The position numbers and the translations under genes are program-made. Source: Fonticula alba ATCC 38817 (taxonomy: Eukaryota; Protista; Nucleariida). Taken from it: a stretch of DNA of 16,466 bases. The stretch lies in the NCBI GenBank assembly GCA_000388065.2, contig KB932230.1; one strand, 5' to 3'. This document shows positions 3,899-16,466 of this stretch, one piece after another. The notes under the pieces were generated by a model. The model saw only the letters and a program-made list of their open reading frames with translations, ran no database searches and had not been told where the DNA came from. Every line of letters begins with the position of its first letter. The stretch's first letter is position 1.

Positions 3899-6800
3899 TC
3901 ACTTGGACTCGGACTTCTTCTTATCCTTCTTGGCAGATTTATCCTCCTTGGAGGACTTCTTCTTGTCGGACTTGTCCTTCTTGTCGGACTTTTCCTTCTT
4001 GTCCTTCTTGTCGGACTTTTCCTTCTTGTCTTTCTTGTCGGACTTCTCCTTCTTGTCAGACTTGTCAGACTTGTCCTTCTTGTCAGACTTGTCCTTCTTG
4101 TCAGACTTGTCCTTCTTGTCAGACTTGTCCTTCTTGTCAGACTTGTCCTTCTTGTCCTTCTGCTCCTCCTTGTCGGACTTGGCCTTCTTGTCCTTCTGCT
4201 CCTTCTTGTCGGACTTGTCCTTCTTCGCAGACTTTGAACCCTCCTCACCAGGCTTCTTGTCATCCTTTCCGGGTTTCTCGTCGGACTTCTTCTTCTTGTC
4301 CTCCTTCTTGCTGGACTTCTTGTCCTCCTTGCGAGACTTCTTCGGCACCGGGTCCGGAGCATCCGCCTGGGCCGCATCATCGCGACTGCGCTTCCGGGCT
4401 TCCTTGTCACGGCCCTTGTCACTCTTCGAGGACTTGAGCACCTTGCCGGCCGACACGGCCTCGCGCCGGCGCTTCTTGCTAGGCTCGAGCTCGGGCTCCG
4501 GCTCCGGCTCCGACTGATTGTCATCCGAGGAATCGGAGCTCAACGAGGCCGAGGAGGAGGAAGAGCCAGCGGCGGCCCGGGCACCACGCTTACGCTTCTT
4601 CGACGAGCCACCATCTTCACCATCGTCTTCGGAGCTCTCCGACGAGTCAGAGGCGCTGGACGAATCGGAAGATGCAGAAGACAGGTTGGAGGAATCCGAA
4701 GAGGCGACCACCGCAGCCGGGATGGCCACAGGAGATAGCTTGATTTCTGGCTCGGTATCTGAATCGGAGCTCGAGGCCGAATCCGAGTCCGAGCTCGAAT
4801 CCGAAGAGGAGGACGAGCTGCTGGAATCCCCCTCCGGGAAGATGTATCTCCCGGCGCTGGGCAGAGCCGGCTCCTCCTCCTCCTCCTCCTCCTCGTCGTC
4901 GTCAGAGGCCGCCGAGTCAGAGCCGGATGCCGGCCCATCAGCAGACGGATCCGAGGCCCGAGGCGCCTCGATGAGGCCGACCACGGTGGCCACCGGCGGG
5001 ACCCCCTCCCACCGGGGAAGGGCCCACGAGTCGTCCATAGCGTCGAGGGCATACTTGGCCAGCAGAGCCTCGCTGGCCTGGACAGCGGCAGCAACCGACT
5101 GGCGAGTCTTCTCCGTGGTAGCCAGCTTCTCCTCGGCCAAAAGGTCCTTCAGGGCGGCGAGGGCCCGGCGGAAGCGCGGCCGCATGGGCTCCAGCTCGCG
5201 ATCGAAGTTGACGCGCCAGCGCTCAAGACGGTTGGCCTCCGGCGCCTGCCCGCCAAAGGACTTGATCGTTCGCCGGTGCATGTCCCGGAAGGGCCGCACC
5301 TCGGTCGGCAGGCAGATGGTGTGCGCGTGGCCAGTGCGCCCGGCGCGAGCCGTCCGCCCAGCGCGGTGAACATACGTCGGCAGGCGCATCGGCGCATCGT
5401 AGTTGATGACATGCTCGATGATGTCCAAATCCAGGCCACGGGCCATGGAGTCCGAGCAGATGAGACTATCCCCCCCCCCCCCCCCGTCACAGACCCATCC
5501 CAGGAAAGCGGCGCCAGGAGTGTGAGTTTCGAGGTTGCACGCTGCCCCAAGTGCCACTCTTGTGTGTTCCTCTGCCCGGCCAGGAGCAAAAGTGCACGAA
5601 GGAGGAAGGGGGAGAAATGCCAAGAAAGGGGCCGGCAGACCCACCGAGCAGCACGTACAGGTTGATATGGCCATTTCGGAAGCGATTGAGAATCCGCGTG
5701 CGAGACTTCATATCCAGGGCACCGGAGAATTCGGCCACCTCGATGCCACCGAGCAGCTGCACCAAGCGGAAGAGCCTATACGTGGGAAGCCGAGCAGGGC
5801 AACGTCAGCAAAGGGAACCCCCCGGCCGGGAAGGGAAGGAGGGAGGGAGAAATCGGGGGACCGAGGGAGCCAGGGTGGGGTGGGCCCGGCCGGCCGGCAG
5901 GAGCAGGCATCATGGAAAGCCGCCACTCCATGCCACGATGGGAGTCCATGACTGGGAGGATCATGGGCAAGTGTTCGCAACGCACCGGTGCGTGGATTCC
6001 ACACTGCTGACGAAGCAGACCACCTTCTGCATGCCCAGGCGGCGCAGAGCATACAGCAAGACCAGGGGCTTGTCCTCGGGCGCGGAGACTACCATGTGCT
6101 CGATCAGAGTGGGCGGCATGACGAAGGAGCGCTCCTCCTGGGTAGAGGTCTGGGAATGTGCAGCGCCGGTGGCCATGGCCGTGGCACCGTGCGGCTCCTC
6201 GGCCATCTGGGACACTGGCTGCAGGCCGAGGTCCACAGTAAAGAAGCGTGGCCGGAAGAGGCGCAGACTGGCGATCTTGGCCGGGTTACGCGTGAGCGTG
6301 GCACTAACCAGGATCTTCTGAAGGAACTGGTGCCTCGGCGGCTCGCGCATGCACGGGGTATGGCCCTGGGCCCGAAGGGACACGGCGTCCGGTTCCGGGG
6401 TGTTCCTGCGCACGAGCACATGCATTCGTGTACATGTATGGATGCATGCATACGTGTGTGTGTGTGTGTGAGTGTGTGTGTAAATGTGAAACGTGAGTAG
6501 GGGAAAGCAGACAAAGAGGCATGTGTACAAAGAGGCCTCAGCAGGACGCACCAGCTGGGCGCCGTGGCCCGCGGGTCGCATGCCTCGAGCACACGGGGCA
6601 GCCAGTTGTGGTACGAGTCATTCATCAGCCGGTCGGCCTCGTCAATCACCAGGAAGCGCAGATGCTGCAGGGTAAAGCCCGGGGTCTGGGCCAAATGGTC
6701 CATCAGGCGGCCAGGCGTGCAAACCAGAATGTCCAGGGCACTGTGGCCGCCGGCCAGGCGGCCGGGACCGGCAACATGCCCCGGAGCGTCATCCTCCGGC

Positions 6801-8056
6801 TGGAAGGCCGACAGCGCCGGATGCACCATGGAGGCCTGCTCCGCGGACAAGGACCGAATACCGGCGGCCAGGCCCACGCGCAAATCCGTCCCGGCGATCA
6901 GGCGACTGAAGACCTGGTGAATTTGCACGGCCAGCTCGCGCGTCGGCAGGACCACCAGCGCCCGGAGGCGGACCACCCGTCGACCGGTCAGGGCCTCGAT
7001 CACGGGCACCGCAAAGCTCAGGGTCTTGCCGCTGCCGGTGGGCGCGGCGATACACACGTCACCGGTGGCCAAACCAGCCAGTCCCAGTGGCAGGGGCTCG
7101 CCTCCGCCAATGGAGACCCCCGGCTCCGAGGGATTCTCCCGGCGAAGGGTCTGACACACGGCCGCCTGGATGGGGAAAAGCTTCTCAATGCCAAACTGCC
7201 GGGTCAGTGTACGTGCCATGGTCGAGGACAGGACCTCCGGCTGCGGCTCCAACAGCGACAGACCCTGTGTCAAGTCCGAGGGGAACACCTGGATGAGCGT
7301 GCCATCGGTGGACCGGGCGGTCGCGCGCGCCGTCAAGGACAACGAATCATCAAAGTCCTCCTCGGCCATGTCCAGGGTCTTGCCGGTGTCTGGCAGCCCA
7401 GTGGCGACATCCACCGCCGGGGTGGTGTACGCCCGGTCGATGAGAATCTGGCGGGCCTTCAAGTCGGCCAGCTGTCCGGGCATGTTCTCATTCAGGCTGC
7501 TCTCGTCTTCCGACTCGTCGCCATCCTGGTCGTCATCGCTGTCGGAGGAGAGGGCTTCCTCCTCCTCGTCGTGCGACTCGATCGGGGCGTCGGCCTCGGC
7601 TTCGAGGCCATCGGCATCGGCGTTGGCGGACTTGCGCGGGCGCGCGCGGAACCGGTTCGACAAGGGCCGCTGTTGAGCCAGCGCCTCGGCCCGGCGCTGC
7701 ACCCGGTGCCAGTTCTTCAGGGCATTTTTCGCCGGATCCAGGGCCTTCTTCTTCTTGGCGGACTTCCCTGGCGCTGGCGCGGGCCGAGCGGACACCGCGG
7801 ACATGTCAGCGGCTTTGTACGGGGGGAGGAAGAGGAGGAGGGGGGGGGGACGGGCTGAAAGGAGGGAGAGAGAGAGGCAGAGGCCGGGCAGAGGGGGAGA
7901 AGGGATGGAGAGAAGGAGACACAGGGAGAGGGAGAGAGCGAATAGGAAGGGGAGAGTGTGTTACCTCTATAGCGCGGGCGACCCCCCGCCGCAGCACCGC
8001 TCGAAAAAGCCCCGGCCCTTGCGTCTCCATGCTGTTGGAGATCGCTCCGCTCCACT

Positions 8057-8128
<72 letters not shown>

Positions 8129-8837: not shown

Positions 8838-9347
8838 TTAGGCGGTGGCCGCCGGGGCCGGGCTCCCGGCATGCTTGACCTTGAGGGCAGCCAGGGTCTC
8901 CTCGGACAGGCGCTCAAAGAGGCGGGCCGGGGTGCCGATGACATGGCCGGGCTTGATGCCAAAGCGGAAGGACTCCGACAGCGCGAGGAGCGGCAGGACG
9001 GCGCCAGACTCGGCAGCCGGGGACAGCTGCTCGCAGATGGCCACCGAGGTGGCCGGGATGAAGGGATGCAGCAGGGTGGCAATGAGGTAGACGAAGTTGA
9101 CCATGACATAGAGGAGGGTGTTGCACTCGTCGGGATTCTCGTTCAGCAGGGTCTGACCGAGCTATGGGCATGCCGCACGCGGGACACGCGGAACGAGCGG
9201 GGCGAGGAGAAAAAGGTTGCGCACGTGCGTGTGTGTGTGTGTGTGTGAGCAAGAGGAAGGGCAGGGCGTGCTTGTGCGCGAGTGCGAAAAGGAAAGCTCC
9301 CCCCTCGGCCAAGTCCCGATTCGGATGGGGGGGGGGGGGGGGGGGGG

Positions 9348-9385
<38 letters not shown>

Positions 9386-12300
9386 CCAAGAGCGAGAGAG
9401 GCCATGGGAGTGAGGGGACATACGCCAGTGGCAGTGATGAAGTTGTTTCCGGCGGCCGAGATACGCATGACCAGGTGCAGGGCATCACGAATGCGCAGGG
9501 TCTCCATGCGATCGAGGTACTCGGCCAGCAGGGTGTTGACCTCCTGCACGAAGGGATGGGTGGCCGGGTCGAAGTTGGGCCCAGGAGCCGGGACCTGGCG
9601 GCGGTAGCGCGAGTCCAGGAACTTTGGAGTGGGCATGGGAACACGGGCGCATGGATGTGCAACGGATATGTGAGAAGGCCAGCGAAAGGAAGGGCTGTGG
9701 CCCGGCGGGCTGGACAAATGACGGGGAGAAAATGCGGCCCTCGGGCCCGAGGGCCGATCGTACGCACGCCCAGGGTCCGGTTGACCAGGTTGCCGACATT
9801 GGCCAGCAGCTCGGAGTTGACACGCAGACCGAAGTCGGTCCAGTTGAACTGGGAGTCATGCTGCTCCGGGCGGTTGGCCAGCAGGTAATAGCGCCACAGA
9901 CAGGCCGGGATGCCGGAGGCGATGGCATCATCGCCGAAGACACCGATGTTCCGGGACTTGGAGAACTTGCCGCCCTCGTAGTTCAGGTACTCGGTGGTGC
10001 TCAGGTGGTTGAGCATGGTGTACTTGTCACCGGTGCCGATCAGCGAGCAGGGGAACATCACCGTGTGGAAGGGGACATTGTCCTTGCCCATGAACTGGTA
10101 CAGCTGCACCTGCTCCGGGTTCTTCCACCAGAGCTCCCAGTCGTCGGTGTACTCGGCCGTGATGGACAGATAGCCGATCGGCGCGTCGAACCACACGTAC
10201 AGCACCTTGTTCTCCATGCCAGGCAGGGGGACCGGGGTACCCCAGGACAGGTCGCGGGTCATGCACCGGGCGCGCAGGCCCTCACGCAGCCAGGACTCGG
10301 TGATGGACTTCGAGTTGTCGCTCCACATGCCTACATCGAGGGAGCATCGGGAGAGACACGGTGAGGGGGGACCAGGAAGGGAGGAGAGGGGGAAGGGAGT
10401 GAGGAGGAAAGAGAGATGGAGAAAGAGAGAGATGGAGAAAGAGAGAGAGGGAGAAAAAAGGGGGAAGAGCAAAGAAAGGCAGGGAAATCCGTGTCCTGGG
10501 GTCAAGGGACACGAGAAAAGCCCCAACATAAGCGGAGCGTGCAAGCCACCGAGTAACAACAGCAACAGCAACAGCAACAGCAGCAGCAAGGGACATGTAC
10601 GGGGGCTGGAGGACGTACCGGTGGAGGCCTCCTTGATCCAGGCCTGCAGGTCGTCCTGGACCTTCTCCAGGTGGAGGAACATATGCTCGGACTGACGCAT
10701 GACCGGGGTCGAGCGGCACAGCTTGCACCGGGGATCGATCAGCTCCACAGCATTGATGAGCTTGCCGCACCCGTCGCACTGGTCACCGCGGGCATCGGGG
10801 AACTTGCAGAAGTTGCAAGTGCCCTCGACAAAGCGATCCGACAGGAAGCGCTGATCCTTCTCGCACCACCACTGGTCGATGGTCTGCTTGGAGAAGAGCC
10901 CGCGCTCGTAGATGCGAGAGAAGATCCCCTGGGCAATGCCGGCATGCTTGGGGTCGGTAGTGCGGCCGAAGTGATCGAAATCAATGTCAAACCACTTGTA
11001 GATGGCCGTGTGCAGGGCATTGTACCGGTCGCAAATGGAGCGACAGCTCTCGCCGCGCTCGGAGGCCAGGGTCTCGGTGGCGGTGCCATACTCATCGGTA
11101 CCACACACGTAGAGGGTGTTGTAGCCGCGCTGACGGCAGTAACTACACAGGAGAGCGGGGGGGGGGGGGAACAGATGGGCCGCATGTCAGCAAAGTCACC
11201 GGGCAGGGGGAGGAGGGGGGATCGAGATTCCAGCCGCAGTCGGTGGGGTTCTACACGGACCGGGCATAAACGTCAGCCGACAGGACGCAGCCGATGATGT
11301 TGCCAAGATGCGGGCTGTTGTTGACATAGGGCAGGGCACTGGTAATCAGGATGTTGCGCTCGCCCTCCTTCGGCAGGCTGTGGGGGAATGCATTTCGGCG
11401 GAGGGGCAAAGCATGAGAGGAAGGCGACCGAGGGGGGAGAAGGAATTCCAGCGGAGGAAAAGACAGCTGTCAGTGGCAGAAGACGCTTTTCTCGGCGAAG
11501 GCGATATTACGGGCGGAGCGAGGGACAGGGGAGATGACAACATACATGGTGCCCGCGGAGGGAGACTGGTGGAAGAGCGACTCATCGACCATGCGCAGGG
11601 CGGCCAGAGGCTCGGTGCAGTCAATGACAATCAGGCTGACGCCCTGGAAAAGTATGCATGTGTGTGTGTGTGCGTGTGTGTGTGTGTACGGGGGCCCGTG
11701 GGTGTGCGAAGGAGATGTCAGAAGCAGGCACACAGTCGGTAATGCTCGGCCCACGCCTGCGAGGAGTCCCCTTTCCAGCGAGGTTCGCCATGGAGCAACA
11801 GCATGAGCCACAGGGCCCGAGGGCTACGCACGGCATTGGTGATGGTGGCATGGGCATCCAGCAGCAGAACCTCCGGGTTGCCGAGAGCCTCGGTCATGCC
11901 GGCCAGCAGCGGAGCCGAGACCAGCTTCTCCAGGAAGCCAGTCAGCGGGGTGGACACATCACGCGCATGGTTGCCAGCCAGACGGGCGAAAACCACGAGG
12001 TTCTCCAGCAGGGAAAGTTTCTGCTGGGGCGGGGCGGGGGCAGGTGCAAGATCGAGTCAGCAATGTGCGACGGTGAGGTGTGTGTGTGTGTATGTGTGGC
12101 TTTGGGGCGGCTTGCCAGCTATGCGGCATTTGGGAGTACCTGCTGGCTGGCGAAGTGCTTGGCGACCAAGGCGCTGACCGAAGCGTCGGAGCTGCCGGCG
12201 CTCAGGGTGTCCAGCAGGGTGAAAAGCCGGAAGCCGGCCAGGAACTCATCCAGGCCGATCAGACCGGCCGACTGGAGGATGTGCCCGACGATGGCGATGG

Positions 12301-12640
12301 TCGAGAAGAGGACCGACGCGCCGGACTTCACCTTCATGTGCACGTCGCCATGGTAGCCGGCAACTGGGGGACCTGGTCAGCAGACGGCCGGGAGGCATAT
12401 TCATGTATGTATGTATGTATGTGTGTGTGTGTGTGTGTGTATGCATCCACAAAGGAGGGCTGGGCAAGGGGTGGGTGGGCATCCGAAGTGGCCAGGGCCA
12501 AACGCACGAGCCTCATCGGCCTTCGGAGTAATCTCCAGCTGAACATTCAGACCGGCGTCGTTGGCGAGGCTGATCGCCGCGGCCACAAGGACCGCCTCGC
12601 TGATGTTCGACTGAGCCTGGATAAAGACGACAGGGGACAT
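8838..12640 (-). CDS. MARS1: Methionyl-tRNA synthetase, cytosolic eukaryotic type with N-terminal GST-like region, 793 aa
   Basis: Exons (minus strand): 12640-12508, 12372-12140, 12023-11832, 11643-11546, 11377-11261, 11142-10619, 10330-9768, 9621-9424, 9161-8838. Total 2382 nt, phase-consistent. Motifs: [21 protein letters not shown] (HIGH), CGTDEYGT, Zn knuckles (CNFC...CDGC...CKLC), [26 protein letters not shown] (KMSKS), [11 protein letters not shown], anticodon-domain helices. The N-terminal [12 protein letters not shown] resembles the GST-like domain of MARS1. Stop TAA at 8840-8838. Confidence 0.96.
9327..9382. repeat. 56-nt poly-G tract with a single C at 9348, in the last MARS intron (poly-C on the transcript)
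   Basis: Read directly from the sequence. Confidence 0.95.
10555..10589. repeat. Mixed (AAC/AGC)n trinucleotide repeat in MARS intron 10618-10331
   Basis: aacaacagcaacagcaacagcaacagcagcagcaa on the plus strand; reads as poly-Leu in the MARS frame. Confidence 0.85.
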
Positions 12641-13561
12641 GCTGGCAGGGGAGCAAGCAGGTGAGAGGGGGGGGGGGGAAGAAAAGGAAGGGGGAGGGGG
12701 GAGGAGGGCTCTGGTGCACATCAGCGGGGCAACCTGGGGATGCCGGCTCTTGGGCTTTTTGTCCGGGGGGGAGGGGGGGGGGGCCGCCGGGCCGGGGCGC
12801 CGGATGTTGATGCCTTGTGCCGGAGGGGGCTGGGTCGGGCCAACCAGCAGGGCCTGAGCCTGCGCATGTTTCTGCCGGACCAAGCCCGCCCCCCTCCGTG
12901 CCTCCTCCCCACGCGCTGCACCCCCCCCCCCCAGGGCACCCCGGGCAAGGCGGGGCGGGACGAGCGCGGGAACCAGCCCGCCAGAATCGATTGACATTGT
13001 GTTCTAGTGTGCGTCGACTCGCCGTGGGAACCAGAGCCTGGTGTCGGGGAGCGCGATATCCGAACTGCCGATGCATCGGCCCCACCGACCCGCGGAGTCC
13101 TGGCCGCGCCGGACCGCCACGTGCCGGTTGTCGGCGTGCCGGTCAAGCTGCGGCGGTGTTCAGGCCCCGTCCCGCACGAGGGGCGTGGCGGGGAGAGATC
13201 TTGTCCTGGGGGGCGGGGGTGGGGGCGCCCAGGCTCCCACGCACGCGGACGCCCACCCGCGTCGACCCTTTCTCCTCGAGGCCCGGGGCAGCCAGGAGTT
13301 GTGGCATGCCTATATGCCTCGGGGTTTCCTCGTGCTGTCGCGCATGTGCGCGTGTGCGGGCTGCGAGAGCGGCGTGGGCCGGGAGCATTCTCGAGGCGCA
13401 CGTCTCACCTCATGTAGCGGGATTTTTGGCTGCCCGCTCAAGCGAGATGGCCGCCCAGGCACCCCAGGCCATTCCTCCAGACACCTTTTTCTCTCTTGGA
13501 TTCCTCCTCCTCCTCCTCCTCCCTTTCCTCCCCTCTCCCTCTTTCCCTCTCGCTCCCCGGA
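12641..13561. promoter_or_regulatory. Head-to-head intergenic region between MARS (-) and tRNase Z (+); probable bidirectional promoter, includes an upstream MARS intron
   Basis: Divergent ATGs at 12640 and 13562. A clear intron 3' end (pyrimidine tract, CTCAC, CAG at 12644-12642) lies directly before the MARS ATG. No specific promoter motif was identified. Confidence 0.5.
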
Positions 13562-16365
13562 ATGCATTCTCAGTTGCTGGCGCTGAGGCGGGTGCCCCCG
13601 CAGCTACCCATCAGGCCATGCTTGTCGACAGCCGGCATGCGTCCTGCACTCGGCTGTCGATTCTACTCCGCGCAATCGGACGAGGAGGAAGCCTTCGACC
13701 GTTTGCTGACCCACTTGGATGACGCCGCCAAGGCCCCGGCCGGCATGGCAGCTACCGGTCCCCCGCACAGGGCCTCGGCCGGTGCTCCGCTCGGGGGCGC
13801 TCCTCCTGGGGGCAGCTTCCCCGGAAATGGTGCTTTCGGTGGCCACTTCCCGGGCAGCGCCATCCCTGGCGGAGGCGGCTCCAGTATGCCCCGCAATGGT
13901 CAGGGTGGTGGCTCCACCGGTGGTTTCCCTGGTGGCCACTCTGGTACTCCGGCCGGTGGCATCGGTGGCTTCCCCCGGGCGGCAGGTGGTTTCCCCGGCG
14001 GTGGCGGCGGCGGCGGCTTCCCGGGCGGTGGCGGCGGCTTTCCGGGCGGTGGCGGCGGCTTCCCGGGCGGTGGCGGCGGCTTCCCGGGCAGTGGCGGTGG
14101 CTTCCCGGGCGCCAATCGTTTCCCCTCTGGTGCCGGGGGCTTCCCAGGAGGACCAACTGGGTTCGCCAGTGGTCCATCAGGCTTCCCACATACTCCCGAT
14201 GGTACTTCTGCTCAAGTCGCTAGCAGTCGGCCAAACAGCTACTACAGCCCCCCCGCATCTCACGGCTTCGCCGGGGGCTATTCAACGCCCAGTCATGGTC
14301 AGGGATTCCCTGCTGGAAGACATCCTATGCCCAACATGGGCTATGCGCCTCCGGCTGGGGGCTATGCGCCTCCGGCTGGGGGCTATGCGCCTCCGAGTGG
14401 GGGCTATGCGCCTCCGGCTGGGGGCTATGCGCCTCCGGCCGGAGGCTATGTTCCCCCTGCCGGGGGCTATGCGCCTCCGGCCGGCCAATATGGCCCCCCG
14501 GCTGGGGGGTATGCCCCGCCTCCCGGGCGGTATGCTCCTCCTGCTGGATCCGGCGGCCATTTTGCCCCGCCACCGGCCGGTGACTTGAGCAGTGGCTTCG
14601 CGAAGGGGATCTCCCAGGGTGGCTATGGCGGCGCGCAGGCCGGTGACTTTCCTGGCCGGGCGTCTTTTACGGCGCCGGCCGCCGACTATCTGCGTGCCAT
14701 CGGCAGCAGCAGCAGCAGCAGCAGCACCAATACCAACATGCACCATATGGCGCCGCCAGGCTTCCCGATGATGCCGGACTACCTTGCTGGCGTGACCCAG
14801 CCGGCGGTGGCCCCCCAGGGGCGGACCTCGGCACCGCAGCCAAGTGAAGCGGCCAAGAATGACCCCCAGCGAAGCCGCTCGGGAAGTGCCCGGAACAGTC
14901 TTGGTCTGTCGGGGGTGGCCATTCCGCGTTTCGGCCAGGATGCCCCCCCGTCGGATGACTCGCCGGGGGTCATCCCCGAGGCTGACCACCTCTTCGATGC
15001 CGATGCGCGCGACATGCCCCAGATGCCCAGGCAGCGGGAGAAGCGCGAAAAGCGCGACCGGCGCTCGGAGAATGAGAAGCGAAGCAGCAACCGGAGCCTG
15101 GACCTGCAGCAAAAGGACCCGGAGCAGCTTTTCGCCGCGCTGGACTCGAACAAAAGGCACCGGTCCAAATCCAAGTCCAAGTCCAAGGTGCACCCGTCGC
15201 CAAGGATCACGACCACTTCCAAGGGCCACTTCGAGCTGGAGTTCCTCGGCACGTCCAGCAATTATGCGACTCCCTTCCGGAATACCAGCTGCGTGGCCCT
15301 CAAGACCGGTATGTACTCGGGGGTGGGCATCCCCTTTTTGGCGTGCTGCCTGTTTGGAAACCCGGAAATGGGCCGGTTGCCTGACCTGCTTGCTTGTTTG
15401 TCCGGCATGTTGCAGACAATTCCACCTGGCTCTTCGACGTCGGCGAGGGTACCCAGCGGCAGATGCTCCTGTCTTCTGTGCGGCCATCGCGCGTGGATCG
15501 CATTTTCATCACCCACCTCCACGGGGACCATGTGCTGGGTCTGCCGGGCATCCTGTTGAACCTTGCCTCGGATGCCACTCGGCAGATCCATGTCTACGGG
15601 CCGCCAGGTACTTTGGCATCGCCCCCTCGGCCCCTGGCGTTTCGGTCGACCGGCGCACGCTGGGCCTCCATGCCGCCGGGTTTCCCTCCCCCCCCCTGCC
15701 CCGTTCCTCTCCCTCTGGCTCCTTCTCCCTCCGGCAGTGTCACCCTTTCTTCGGCTAACTTCTGCGTGCACGTGCCACAAAAGGTCTCCGGAACTTCGTC
15801 CAGACCTCCCTGCAAACGACCTCCTCGGGGTGGAGCCGCAAGCCGCTGGTCATTCACGAGCTCTTCCGTCGCCGGTCTTCCCTCACCACGGAGGATGACT
15901 TCGTCATGGAAAATGGCTGCTTCAACCTGTACGCTGCCCTCGTTGCCTGGTTGGCCCTTTTTTTTTTTGCCACATCGCTCGGCCTTCATCTCGCTTACCA
16001 TCCGTCCGGTCCCCTGCCACACCTCTCCTCCTTGTTGGATCACCCCCCGCCCCCCCTCCAAACCCCAACAACCACATAAACACCCACACATCACCCCTTC
16101 CCGCGATGGTCCAGCATCTCGGCCGAAGAGGCCGGCGGCCTGGAAGTGCTGGCCGTGCCGATTGTGCACACAGTTGCCTGCTTCGGCTTCGTCGTCAAGG
16201 AGCAGCCCTTCCGTGGCCGGGTGGACAAGGAAATCATCAAGCGCCTGAAGCTGAGTCACATCCAAATGCGAGACATCATGGCCGGTGAGACGATCACCAC
16301 GTCCGATGGCCAGAGTCTGACCAAGGCTGACATCATCGGGCCCGACCGCCCGGGGCGCAAGATTG
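13562..16365 (+). CDS. ELAC1: Ribonuclease Z (tRNase Z, short/bacterial-like ELAC1-type catalytic domain) with long N-terminal extension and predicted mitochondrial presequence; 3' end outside the window
   Basis: Exons: 13562-15308, 15416-15607, 15784-15928, 16115-16365, then a donor GTGCGT at 16366; phase-consistent. Motifs: FELEFLGTSS...RNTSCVAL, WLFDVGEGTQRQ, RIFITHLHGDHVLGLPG (intact HxHxDH), IHVYGPPGLRNF, PIVHTVACFGFVVKE, flexible arm ending GPDRPGRKI. The symbol denotes the family; orthology is not established. Confidence 0.9.
13991..14110 (+). repeat. Coding tandem repeats (FPGGGGG)n, about 21-nt unit
   Basis: ttcccgggcggtggcggcggc-type units in tRNase Z exon 1, flanked by further dispersed GFPG motifs. 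Confidence 0.9.
14339..14548 (+). repeat. Ten 21-nt coding tandem repeats (GYAPPAG)n
   Basis: ggctatgcgcctccggctggg consensus; 210 nt = 10 units, degenerating toward the 3' end. Confidence 0.95.
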
Positions 16366-16466
16366 GTGCGTGCCCCTCCATCCCCATTCACGGCGAGACT
16401 GCCTGCCCCCATTGGCTCGGGGAGGTCGGTCGTGCATGTATTCCTCCCTCCTCCGCTCCCCCCCCC

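What the first reader, a model, noticed from the sequence alone, without database searches (positions are those of the whole stretch)
13562..15308. Short-form-type tRNase Z fused to a mitochondrial presequence and an about 555-aa N-terminal extension
Seen: one uninterrupted exon encodes MHSQLLALRRVPPQLPIRPCLSTAGMRPALGCRFY/SAQS (Arg-rich, acid-free, R-3-type cleavage motif), then about 500 aa of mostly low-complexity sequence, then the first catalytic strand FELEFLGT at residue 557. The first MBL domain has an intact HLHGDH. Established: in animals and fungi, mitochondrial tRNA 3' processing uses long-form ELAC2/Trz1, whose N-terminal half has a degenerate His motif, while ELAC1 is short, cytosolic and lacks such an extension. 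Inference: this is an organelle-targeted short-form RNase Z with a condensate-forming tail, possibly a distinct mitochondrial RNA-processing system.
Basis: partly seen in the sequence, partly recalled or inferred. Interest (0 to 1): 0.75.

Follow-up and report, generated by a model that had tools for sequence, protein, structure and literature searches.

The report
Short tRNA-trimming enzyme with long floppy head
This amoeba (Fonticula alba) gene makes a short, bacterial-style tRNA-end-trimming enzyme (RNase Z) behind about 530-555 building blocks of floppy, repetitive sequence; the gene and its single RNA copy are real, but the idea that it is sent into mitochondria is only weakly supported.

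Summary
The sequence observation holds. The window is the last 16,466 nt of Fonticula alba scaffold KB932230.1, and the gene is H696_06208, annotated as partial. Exon 1 (13562/13637-15308) encodes G/P/A/S-rich low-complexity sequence and runs directly into a short-form RNase Z domain (TIGR02651, E 5e-51, model positions 1-204 of 302). The HLHGDH motif and the motif III His are intact, and the domain carries its own exosite arm.

RNA contigs confirm three GT..AG introns. They show a fourth splice leading to "ILGDTSDPS", which lies off the scaffold, and they cover exon 1 with no internal joint. The extension and the nuclease therefore share one mRNA. The domain is ZS-type, not ELAC2-like.

The mitochondrial reading is weak:
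- RNA coverage starts at 13617, downstream of the first ATG, and NCBI starts the protein at Met26.
- 7% of random ATG-started frames in this GC-rich window are equally Arg-rich and acid-free.
- There is no amphipathic signal.
- NLS-like basic clusters sit beside the domain.

Short forms are already known in early fungi and choanoflagellates, and some carry a predicted MTS (Zhao 2010). Extended eukaryotic ZS are common; this one has the longest N-extension seen in my sample.

I could not test the protein's C-terminal third or whether Fonticula has a long form. The finding is a new member of a known kind, of moderate-to-low interest.

The parts
13495..13557 (+). CT-rich polypyrimidine tract just upstream of the first in-frame ATG. 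Either 5' leader or promoter-proximal region.
   Evidence: Sequence. Masked as a repeat by read laying. No RNA contig lies on 12900-13616.
13562..13666 (+). Candidate presequence, 35 codons from ATG 13562. It has 5 Arg, no Asp/Glu and RFY|S at residues 33-36. It contains the out-of-frame ATG 13618 and the annotated start ATG 13637 (Met26).
   Evidence: Not covered by RNA upstream of 13617. GC3 is 0.80 over the first 25 codons, a weak coding hint.
13562..15308 (+). Exon 1. N-terminal extension (556 aa from Met1, 531 aa from Met26) plus the first 26 residues of the RNase Z domain.
   Evidence: ORF. NCBI model P0001. RNA contigs without an internal joint.
14003..14111 (+). 21-nt tandem array, 5.2 copies, encoding GGGGGFP repeats.
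14338..14547 (+). 21-nt tandem array, 10 copies, encoding GGYAPPA repeats. This is the only stretch of exon 1 without RNA contig cover.
15014..15229 (+). Basic 72-residue segment (21 K/R, 9 D/E) directly before the domain. It starts at Met485/Met488 and holds two K[KR]x[KR] NLS-like clusters (KREK at residue 494, KRHR at residue 531).
15230..15308 (+). Start of the RNase Z domain: first beta strand FELEFLGT and the motif I / RN loop.
15309..15415 (+). Intron 1 (107 nt, GT..AG).
   Evidence: RNA joint in X1 and X3.
15416..15607 (+). Exon 2. Holds motif II HLHGDH at 15514-15531.
15608..15783 (+). Intron 2 (176 nt, GT..AG).
   Evidence: RNA joint in X1.
15784..15928 (+). Exon 3.
15929..16114 (+). 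Intron 3 (186 nt, GT..AG).
   Evidence: RNA joints in X1, X2 and X3.
16115..16365 (+). Exon 4. Holds the motif III His (16167-16169) and the exosite/flexible arm, which lacks the PGP motif. Ends at GRKI plus one base.
16366..16466 (+). First 101 nt of intron 4 (GTGCGT donor), cut by the scaffold end. RNA continues with TCATCCTCGGGGACACATCCGAC... (V-ILGDTSDPS, motif IV Asp). One contig runs 977 nt further.
   Evidence: Loose ends at 16365 in X1-X3. Scaffold end.

Best explanation
H696_06208 of Fonticula alba is an expressed, spliced nuclear gene for a bacterial-type short-form tRNase Z (ZS, the ELAC1/RnZ class). Its catalytic domain is preceded by about 530-555 residues of lineage-specific, intrinsically disordered low-complexity sequence.

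Shown:
- The domain has the di-zinc His motif, the motif III His and, from RNA, the motif IV Asp. It also has its own exosite arm in the same MBL domain.
- It is therefore ZS-type, and extension and domain lie on one mRNA.

Inferred from the family:
- It works as a head-to-head homodimer that clamps the acceptor/T arm of a tRNA with the arm of one subunit.
- It cuts the 3' trailer after the discriminator, or repairs tRNA 3' ends as ELAC1 does, at the zinc site of the other subunit.

Inferred for the extension:
- It grew largely by replication slippage. Two 21-nt arrays are still visible and have non-optimal codons.
- It acts at most as a flexible tether or weak multivalent interaction region.
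- The basic K/R/S segment next to the domain carries NLS-like clusters.

I consider a nuclear/cytosolic location somewhat more likely (about 0.55) than a mitochondrial one (about 0.35, including dual targeting from the two in-frame ATGs).
For: Identity:
- TIGR02651 RNase_Z E 5e-51, covering model positions 1-204 of 302. NF000801 E 1e-47.
- The alignment shows F/L/G/T, the RN loop, H67-H69-D71-H72 and H164 invariant.

One mRNA: contigs tile 13617-15307 and splice into exons 2-4. All introns are GT..AG. The next exon reads ILGDTSDPS, like the nearest relative P0131.

Gene model: NCBI H696_06208 is partial and cut by the scaffold end.

Extension is low complexity. There is no Pfam family on exon 1 at E up to 1.

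Extended eukaryotic ZS are common: 415-795 aa, N-extension median 72 and maximum 306 in the sample. Fungal ZS reach 554 aa (PMC2942849).

ZS plus ZL is the ancestral opisthokont set (PMC2942849, PMC3433465).

NLS-like clusters.
Against: - The C-terminal third (HEAT/HST loops, motif V His) is off the scaffold and unseen.
- The family score is below the curated cut-off because the protein is truncated (173.6 against 292.95 bits).
- The exosite lacks the usual PGP motif, and motif I lacks the Lys.
- Translation of the extension is inferred from scanning logic, not shown by peptides.
- Contigs cannot exclude an additional internal start giving a shorter isoform.
- Location rests on sequence signals only.
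Confidence: 0.8

Rival explanations
1. First reader's view. The protein starts at ATG 13562, is imported into mitochondria through a cleavable R-3 presequence, and is the mitochondrial tRNA 3' endonuclease of Fonticula. That would be a short-form enzyme where all known mitochondria use the long form.
For: - The first 39 residues from Met1 have 5 Arg and no acidic residue, and RFY|S fits the R-3 motif.
- GC3 is 0.80 in the 25 codons before Met26.
- An out-of-frame ATG at 13618 lies inside the observed RNA and upstream of ATG 13637. This makes ATG 13562 the cleaner scanning start if the TSS lies further upstream.
- ZS of other non-photosynthetic eukaryotes begin with MTS-like extensions: Plasmodiophora, Achlya, Mycena, rusts.
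- MitoProt predicted an MTS in several fungal ZS (PMC2942849 Additional file 2).
- Acaulospora ZS models carry a bS21 (organellar ribosome) domain.
Against: - No RNA contig covers 13558-13616 in any of four runs. Contigs start at 13617 and 13626 with no loose end.
- NCBI starts the protein at Met26, which leaves only MRPALGCRFY before an acidic stretch.
- 7.3% of random ATG-started 40-codon frames in the window pass the same composition test.
- The hydrophobic moment is not above shuffles, and there are 5 Pro in 35 aa.
- NLS-like clusters are present, together with a roughly 500-aa G/P-rich disordered region.
- Every experimentally localised mitochondrial RNase Z is the long form, and human ZS is cytosolic (PMC3790967, PMC9181182, PMC3084753).
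Confidence: 0.3
2. Dual targeting from one gene by two in-frame starts, as in human ELAC2 and Drosophila RNase ZL. Met1 would give a mitochondrial form and Met26 a nuclear/cytosolic form. This is a sub-case of the rival above.
For: - Two in-frame ATGs lie 75 nt apart and flank most of the Arg-rich segment.
- NLS-like clusters are also present.
- There is precedent in the long forms (abstracts of PMC3084753 and PMC4666369).
Against: - Met26 lies inside the putative presequence, not after it.
- There is no RNA evidence for the longer leader.
- All the weaknesses of the MTS listed above apply.
Confidence: 0.15
3. The functional enzyme is a short isoform starting at Met485/Met488. It would have a 69-72-aa basic N-extension, the median length for eukaryotic ZS. 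The upstream 1.4 kb would then be a leader, or a dispensable recently expanded low-complexity ORF.
For: - The median N-extension of 119 extended ZS is 72 aa.
- Met485/488 sit 69-72 residues before the domain.
- The G/P repeat part has low GC3 of 0.52-0.70, unlike true exons.
- Long ORFs also occur on other frames and strands here, for example 401 aa antisense.
Against: - RNA contig depth is similar across exon 1 and exons 2-4 (about 3-6 against 4-8), with no step near 15000.
- Ten in-frame ATGs and no stop lie upstream of Met485, so ribosomes scanning the observed mRNA would start earlier.
- 14600-15000 has coding-like GC3 of 0.75-0.80.
Confidence: 0.1

Closest known systems
Bacterial short-form RNase Z (B. 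subtilis RnZ, PDB 1y44; E. coli ZiPD/RNase BN, PDB 2cbn)
   Same: Best sequence matches (3e-35, 36-42% identity). Same order of motif I, HxHxDH and motif III His, then the exosite arm, then GDT.
   Different: - About 530-555-aa disordered N-terminal extension.
- An insertion of about 15 aa after model position 120.
- The arm lacks the PGP motif.
- Eukaryotic, intron-containing gene.
Fungal and other opisthokont tRNase ZS (Zhao et al. 2010, PMC2942849; Monosiga ZS, PMC3433465; human ELAC1, PDB 3zwf)
   Same: Short form kept beside the long form in early-diverging Holomycota and Holozoa. Variable length (376-554 aa), atypical flexible arms, and a predicted MTS in some. Grouping Fonticula with fungi is not rejected (p-AU 0.46).
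   Different: Not placed inside the fungal ZS clade in the quick tree. The extension is several times longer and made of G/P/A/S repeats. ELAC1 matches less well than the bacterial enzymes (3e-28, only the first 126 residues).
Arabidopsis TRZ2 and algal extended ZS (chloroplast short form; SAP-ZS fusions in green algae)
   Same: An organelle-targeted or N-terminally extended short form is an established eukaryotic pattern (PMC9181182).
   Different: Fonticula is a non-photosynthetic opisthokont, so a plastid role is excluded. There is no SAP or other domain in its extension.
Long-form RNase Z (ELAC2, yeast Trz1), the known mitochondrial enzyme
   Same: Same superfamily and catalytic motifs. 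Two in-frame N-terminal Met codons recall the ELAC2 dual-start arrangement.
   Different: In ZL the first MBL domain is a pseudo-domain without HxHxDH. Here the first domain is catalytic and carries the arm. ELAC2 matches are weak (1e-16).

Membership tests
Short-form RNase Z (TIGR02651 / tRNase ZS) | MBL domain with the HxHxDH zinc motif (motif II) | tested here: met
   HLHGDH at 15514-15531. Invariant in the alignment.
Short-form RNase Z (TIGR02651 / tRNase ZS) | Motif I / PxKxRN loop | tested here: inconclusive
   The RN pair is conserved (R24 invariant), but the sequence reads ATPFRN: the Pro is shifted and there is no Lys.
Short-form RNase Z (TIGR02651 / tRNase ZS) | Motif III His and motif IV Asp (GDT) | tested here: met
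   His at 16167-16169. GDT is seen only in the RNA continuation ILGDTSDPS beyond 16365.
Short-form RNase Z (TIGR02651 / tRNase ZS) | Flexible arm (exosite) between motifs III and IV, in the same domain as the active site | tested here: met
   A segment of normal length aligns to the arm. The PGP motif is replaced (LSHIQMRDIMAGE), atypical as in fungal ZS (PMC2942849).
Short-form RNase Z (TIGR02651 / tRNase ZS) | HEAT and HST loops, motif V His, and a total of one MBL domain | not testable with these tools
   The scaffold ends 101 nt into intron 4. The RNA contig extends 977 nt further, but only 30 letters of it are shown.
Short-form RNase Z (TIGR02651 / tRNase ZS) | Profile score above the curated cut-off | tested here: inconclusive
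   173.6 bits against a cut-off of 292.95. Only model positions 1-204 of 302 are present, because the protein is truncated.
Long-form RNase Z (ELAC2/Trz1) | N-terminal pseudo-MBL domain without the His motif, followed by a catalytic C-terminal domain without the arm | tested here: not met
   The first MBL domain has an intact His motif plus the arm. ELAC2 gives only 1e-16.
Cleavable mitochondrial presequence | Arg-rich, acid-free N-terminus with an R-2/R-3 cleavage motif | tested here: inconclusive
   Present from Met1 (5 R, 0 D/E, RFY|S). However, 7.3% of random ATG frames in the window share the composition.
Cleavable mitochondrial presequence | Amphipathic helix | tested here: not met
   The maximum hydrophobic moment was reached by 1463 of 2000 shuffles (11-residue window) and 1876 of 2000 (18-residue window). 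There are 5 Pro in 35 residues. This is a crude test; TargetP and MitoFates were not available.
Cleavable mitochondrial presequence | Encoded within the mRNA and translated | tested here: inconclusive
   RNA contigs begin at 13617 and 13626, which is 55-64 nt downstream of ATG 13562. Depth is only 3-4.

The most novel reading that the evidence does not exclude
Fonticula imports this bacterial-type short RNase Z into its mitochondria. There it would work beside a bacterial-type RNase P (a mitochondrial RNA plus the RnpA-like protein noted elsewhere in this scan), on tRNAs and on the tRNA-like elements in the mtDNA. That would be the first mitochondrion shown to use a short form. The MTS-like heads of ZS in Plasmodiophora, oomycetes and basidiomycetes hint that this could be widespread, which would overturn the rule that only the long form occurs in mitochondria.
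Probability: 0.25. Interest if true: 0.7.

Novelty: new member of a known kind. Interest (0 to 1): 0.33.

Why it matters
Reviews state that every mitochondrial RNase Z identified so far is the long, eukaryote-specific form, and that the reason is unknown (PMC3790967, PMC9181182). A mitochondrial short form in the sister lineage of fungi would be a counter-example. It would also fit the bacterial-style relics reported for Fonticula mitochondria.

As the evidence stands, the gene shows two things. The ancestral opisthokont ZS survives in Fonticula. And a housekeeping nuclease can carry a very long slippage-derived disordered head, the longest N-extension among about 120 extended ZS sampled. The comparative lead may be worth more than this single gene: many non-photosynthetic eukaryotic ZS begin with MTS-like sequences.

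Tried and rejected
1. Plastid TRZ2-like enzyme. This was my first guess from the GC-rich, intron-bearing sequence. I dropped it once the organism proved to be Fonticula alba, an opisthokont.
2. ELAC2-like long form. Rejected on domain architecture.
3. Phylogeny of 48 ZS domains. It was unresolved: the careful search did not finish in time, and in the quick tree Fonticula sits with an unnamed 439-aa protein and red algae at SH-aLRT 88-90. AU tests reject neither Fonticula+Fungi (p 0.46) nor Fonticula+Bacteria (p 0.41). Animal ELAC1 and alphaproteobacterial sequences were not in the set.
4. A hidden domain in the extension. Pfam found nothing at E up to 1. A word search with residues 400-582 found only the protein itself.
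5. Taxon names for the best unnamed hits. The listing of cluster members gave none.
6. A Fonticula long form or the missing C-terminal fragment. No tool here searches eukaryotic genomes. The earlier notes hold nothing under ELAC or tRNase, and no paper links Fonticula with RNase Z.
7. The exhaustive protein search and structure prediction were not run.
Full report
**Where the window lies.** A word search with the non-repetitive end of exon 1 returned a single protein, NCBI 'hypothetical protein H696_06208, partial [Fonticula alba]', 753 aa and 100% identical. Its gene lies at the very end of scaffold KB932230.1 of assembly GCA_000388065.2. The window is the last 16,466 nt of that scaffold. Fonticula is a non-photosynthetic opisthokont (Rotosphaerida). 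Notes from this scan had already named the organism, and I confirmed it independently.

The neighbours on the minus strand are a methionyl-tRNA synthetase (window 8838-12640) and a 1118-aa DEAD-box helicase (3899-7804). About 920-1000 nt of divergent intergenic DNA lie in front of our gene.

**The observation.**
- The frame is open from 13496.
- The first in-frame ATG is at 13562, and the quoted 39 residues follow.
- FELEFLGT begins at residue 557, nt 15230.
- Exon 1 ends at 15308 at a GTATGT donor.

Residues 40-530 are 23% Gly, 15% Pro, 13% Ala and 9% Ser. They contain two 21-nt tandem arrays: GGGGGFP x5 at 14003-14111 and GGYAPPA x10 at 14338-14547. HLHGDH is intact but lies in exon 2, at 15514-15531. 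One small correction: the second Met is residue 26, not 27.

**Gene structure and transcription.** Four 2012 runs held as Logan contigs were laid on 12900-16466. They come from two samples of one study and are evidently RNA, because their contigs skip the introns.
- They confirm introns 15309-15415, 15608-15783 and 15929-16114, all GT..AG.
- They show a fourth donor at 16366. The RNA continues with letters that read V-ILGDTSDPS, which is the motif IV 'GDT' of RNase Z.
- One contig runs 977 nt past that point, so the rest of the gene exists but lies off the scaffold.

Within exon 1 the contigs tile 13617-14395 and 14542-15307 without any joint. The only hole is the GGYAPPA tandem array, where a de Bruijn assembly is expected to break. 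One contig joins 14925-15307 directly to exon 2.

Ten in-frame ATGs and no stop precede Met485, so ribosomes scanning this mRNA should translate the extension. The region 14600-15200 has GC3 of 0.81, like exons 2-4 at 0.78-0.85. The G/P repeat part has only 0.52-0.70, as expected for young slippage-derived repeats.

**What the nuclease is.**
- NCBIfam gives TIGR02651 RNase_Z at E 5e-51 over model positions 1-204 of 302. The score of 173.6 bits is below the 292.95 cut-off only because a third of the protein is missing.
- An alignment with bacterial, fungal and protist short forms shows the FLGT strand, the RN loop, H-x-H-x-D-H and the motif III His invariant.
- It also shows a flexible arm of normal length between motif III and GDT, although the usual PGP motif is replaced. 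Zhao et al. describe the same atypical feature for fungal ZS (PMC2942849).

In long-form enzymes the first MBL domain is a pseudo-domain that keeps the arm but has lost the His motif. Here the active site and the arm are in the same first domain. It is therefore ZS-type whatever follows, and a downstream second domain is unlikely. The HEAT/HST loops and the motif V His could not be read.

**Relatives.** Two word searches, one over lengths 122-387 aa and one over 414-1318 aa, found no close orthologue; the best identity was 35-43%. They did find more than a hundred extended eukaryotic short forms of 415-795 aa:
- green and red algae, some with a SAP domain;
- Plasmodiophora, oomycetes and diatoms;
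- Glomeromycota, rusts, Cryptococcus, Mycena and Anaeromyces.

Measured with a bacterial profile, their N-terminal extensions have a median of 72 aa and a maximum of 306. Fonticula's 531/556 aa is the longest in the sample.

A 48-sequence tree is poorly resolved. Fonticula falls outside the well-supported bacterial clade and outside the fungal ZS clade (SH-aLRT 83), next to an unnamed 439-aa protein that shares the LGDTSDPS string. AU tests reject neither Fonticula+Fungi (p 0.46) nor Fonticula+Bacteria (p 0.41).

Vertical descent from the opisthokont ancestor is the simplest reading but is not demonstrated. That ancestor had both ZS and ZL, as Monosiga, cnidarians, chytrids, zygomycetes and basidiomycetes still do (PMC2942849; PMC3433465).

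**The mitochondrial claim, evidence for.**
- From Met1 there are 5 Arg and no acidic residue in 39 positions.
- RFY|S fits the R-3 cleavage motif. That motif is from my own knowledge; it was not tested with a predictor.
- The 25 codons before Met26 have GC3 of 0.80.
- An out-of-frame ATG at 13618, inside the observed RNA, would interfere with a start at 13637. This slightly favours a TSS upstream of 13562.
- Short forms of several non-photosynthetic eukaryotes begin with MTS-like extensions.
- MitoProt predicted an MTS in fungal LbiTrz2, LbiTrz3, CciTrz2 and SlaTrz2 (PMC2942849 Additional file 2).
- Two Acaulospora ZS models carry a bS21 domain. That bS21 is restricted to organellar ribosomes in eukaryotes is from my own knowledge.

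**The mitochondrial claim, evidence against.**
- In none of the four runs does a contig reach 13558-13616. Contigs from two different samples start at 13617 and 13626 with no loose end, so no upstream exon is indicated. Depth is only 3-4, so this is suggestive, not decisive.
- NCBI starts the protein at Met26. That leaves only ten residues before RFY|S, followed at once by an acidic stretch.
- In this 62-69% GC window, 24 of 331 (7.3%) arbitrary ATG-started 40-codon open frames have at least 5 K/R and no D/E.
- The candidate's hydrophobic moment is not above shuffles, and it holds five prolines.
- The 72 residues before the domain hold 21 K/R and two K[KR]x[KR] clusters, which look like nuclear signals.
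- All experimentally localised mitochondrial RNase Z enzymes are long forms, and human ZS is cytosolic (PMC3790967; PMC9181182; PMC3084753).

I put mitochondrial import, alone or dual, at about 0.3-0.35.

**Mechanism.** The catalytic residues and the arm are shown. The following is inferred from the family. It is a zinc-dependent homodimer in which the arm of one subunit holds the tRNA elbow while the other subunit cuts after the discriminator. Alternatively it removes damaged 3' ends, as ELAC1 does in ribosome quality control (cited in PMC9181182). A protein deAMPylase activity recently reported for RNase Z (PMC12663964) is a further possibility.

The extension has regularly spaced Phe/Tyr in Gly/Pro/Ala spacers (31 aromatics in residues 61-345). 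That composition is compatible with weak multivalent interactions, but nothing here tests condensate formation. Low-complexity tails occur in other housekeeping genes of this window: the helicase has a tail of about 300 aa rich in Ser/Asp/Glu and Lys. The extension may therefore be largely neutral.

**Novelty and verdict.** A short-form RNase Z in Fonticula is expected. An N-terminally extended eukaryotic ZS is a known pattern, and a predicted MTS on fungal ZS was tabulated in 2010. What is unusual is the size and repeat nature of the extension. The finding is a new member of a known kind.

The most novel reading still open is a mitochondrial short form working beside the bacterial-type RNase P relics noted elsewhere in this scan. 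It has perhaps a one-in-four chance and would be of real interest.

**Not testable here.** Three things could not be tested: the C-terminal third of the protein, the presence of a long form in Fonticula, and the transcription start. The scan has not reported this gene before on other DNA.

Noticed in passing
window 13618-13722 (+): An out-of-frame ATG at 13618 opens a 35-codon upstream ORF that overlaps the annotated start ATG 13637 and ends at TGA 13720-13722. It lies inside the RNA contigs that begin at 13617.
   Followed up: partly
P0124, P0152, P0146, P0159, P0163, P0002, P0126: Short-form RNase Z proteins of non-photosynthetic eukaryotes (Plasmodiophora, Achlya, Mycena, rust fungi) and of unnamed metagenome proteins start with 37-100-aa basic, acid-poor, MTS-like extensions. 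This may point to an overlooked class of organelle-targeted ZS.
   Followed up: partly
P0125 residues 418-462; P0132 residues 648-689: Two Acaulospora morrowiae ZS gene models end in a Ribosomal_S21 (bS21) domain (E 1e-9 and 8e-9). This is either a true fusion or two merged neighbouring genes.
   Followed up: partly
P0128, P0129, P0130, P0198, P0222, P0227: Green-algal-type extended ZS carry a SAP domain in their N-terminal extension (PF02037; P0128 residues 130-160, E 5e-8).
   Followed up: partly
window 3899-5674 (-), tandem arrays 3920-4234: The DEAD-box helicase gene ends in a low-complexity tail of about 300 aa (Ser/Asp/Glu run, then KKDKSDKK-type repeats from 18/27/36-nt arrays). It is another housekeeping protein with a long disordered appendage.
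   Followed up: no
window 8058-8126, 1777-1858, 9327-9382: A perfect (CA)34 microsatellite, a (TG)n array and a 56-nt poly-G tract lie in non-coding parts of the window.
   Followed up: no
window 15309, 15608, 15929, 16366: The four donors of this gene read GTATGT, GTACTT, GTACGC and GTGCGT. The second donor has T, not G, at +5.
   Followed up: partly
window 14282-15487 (-): A 401-aa antisense ORF and 289-304-aa ORFs in other + frames overlap exon 1. They are by-products of stop-poor GC-rich repeats and are not evidence of genes.
   Followed up: no
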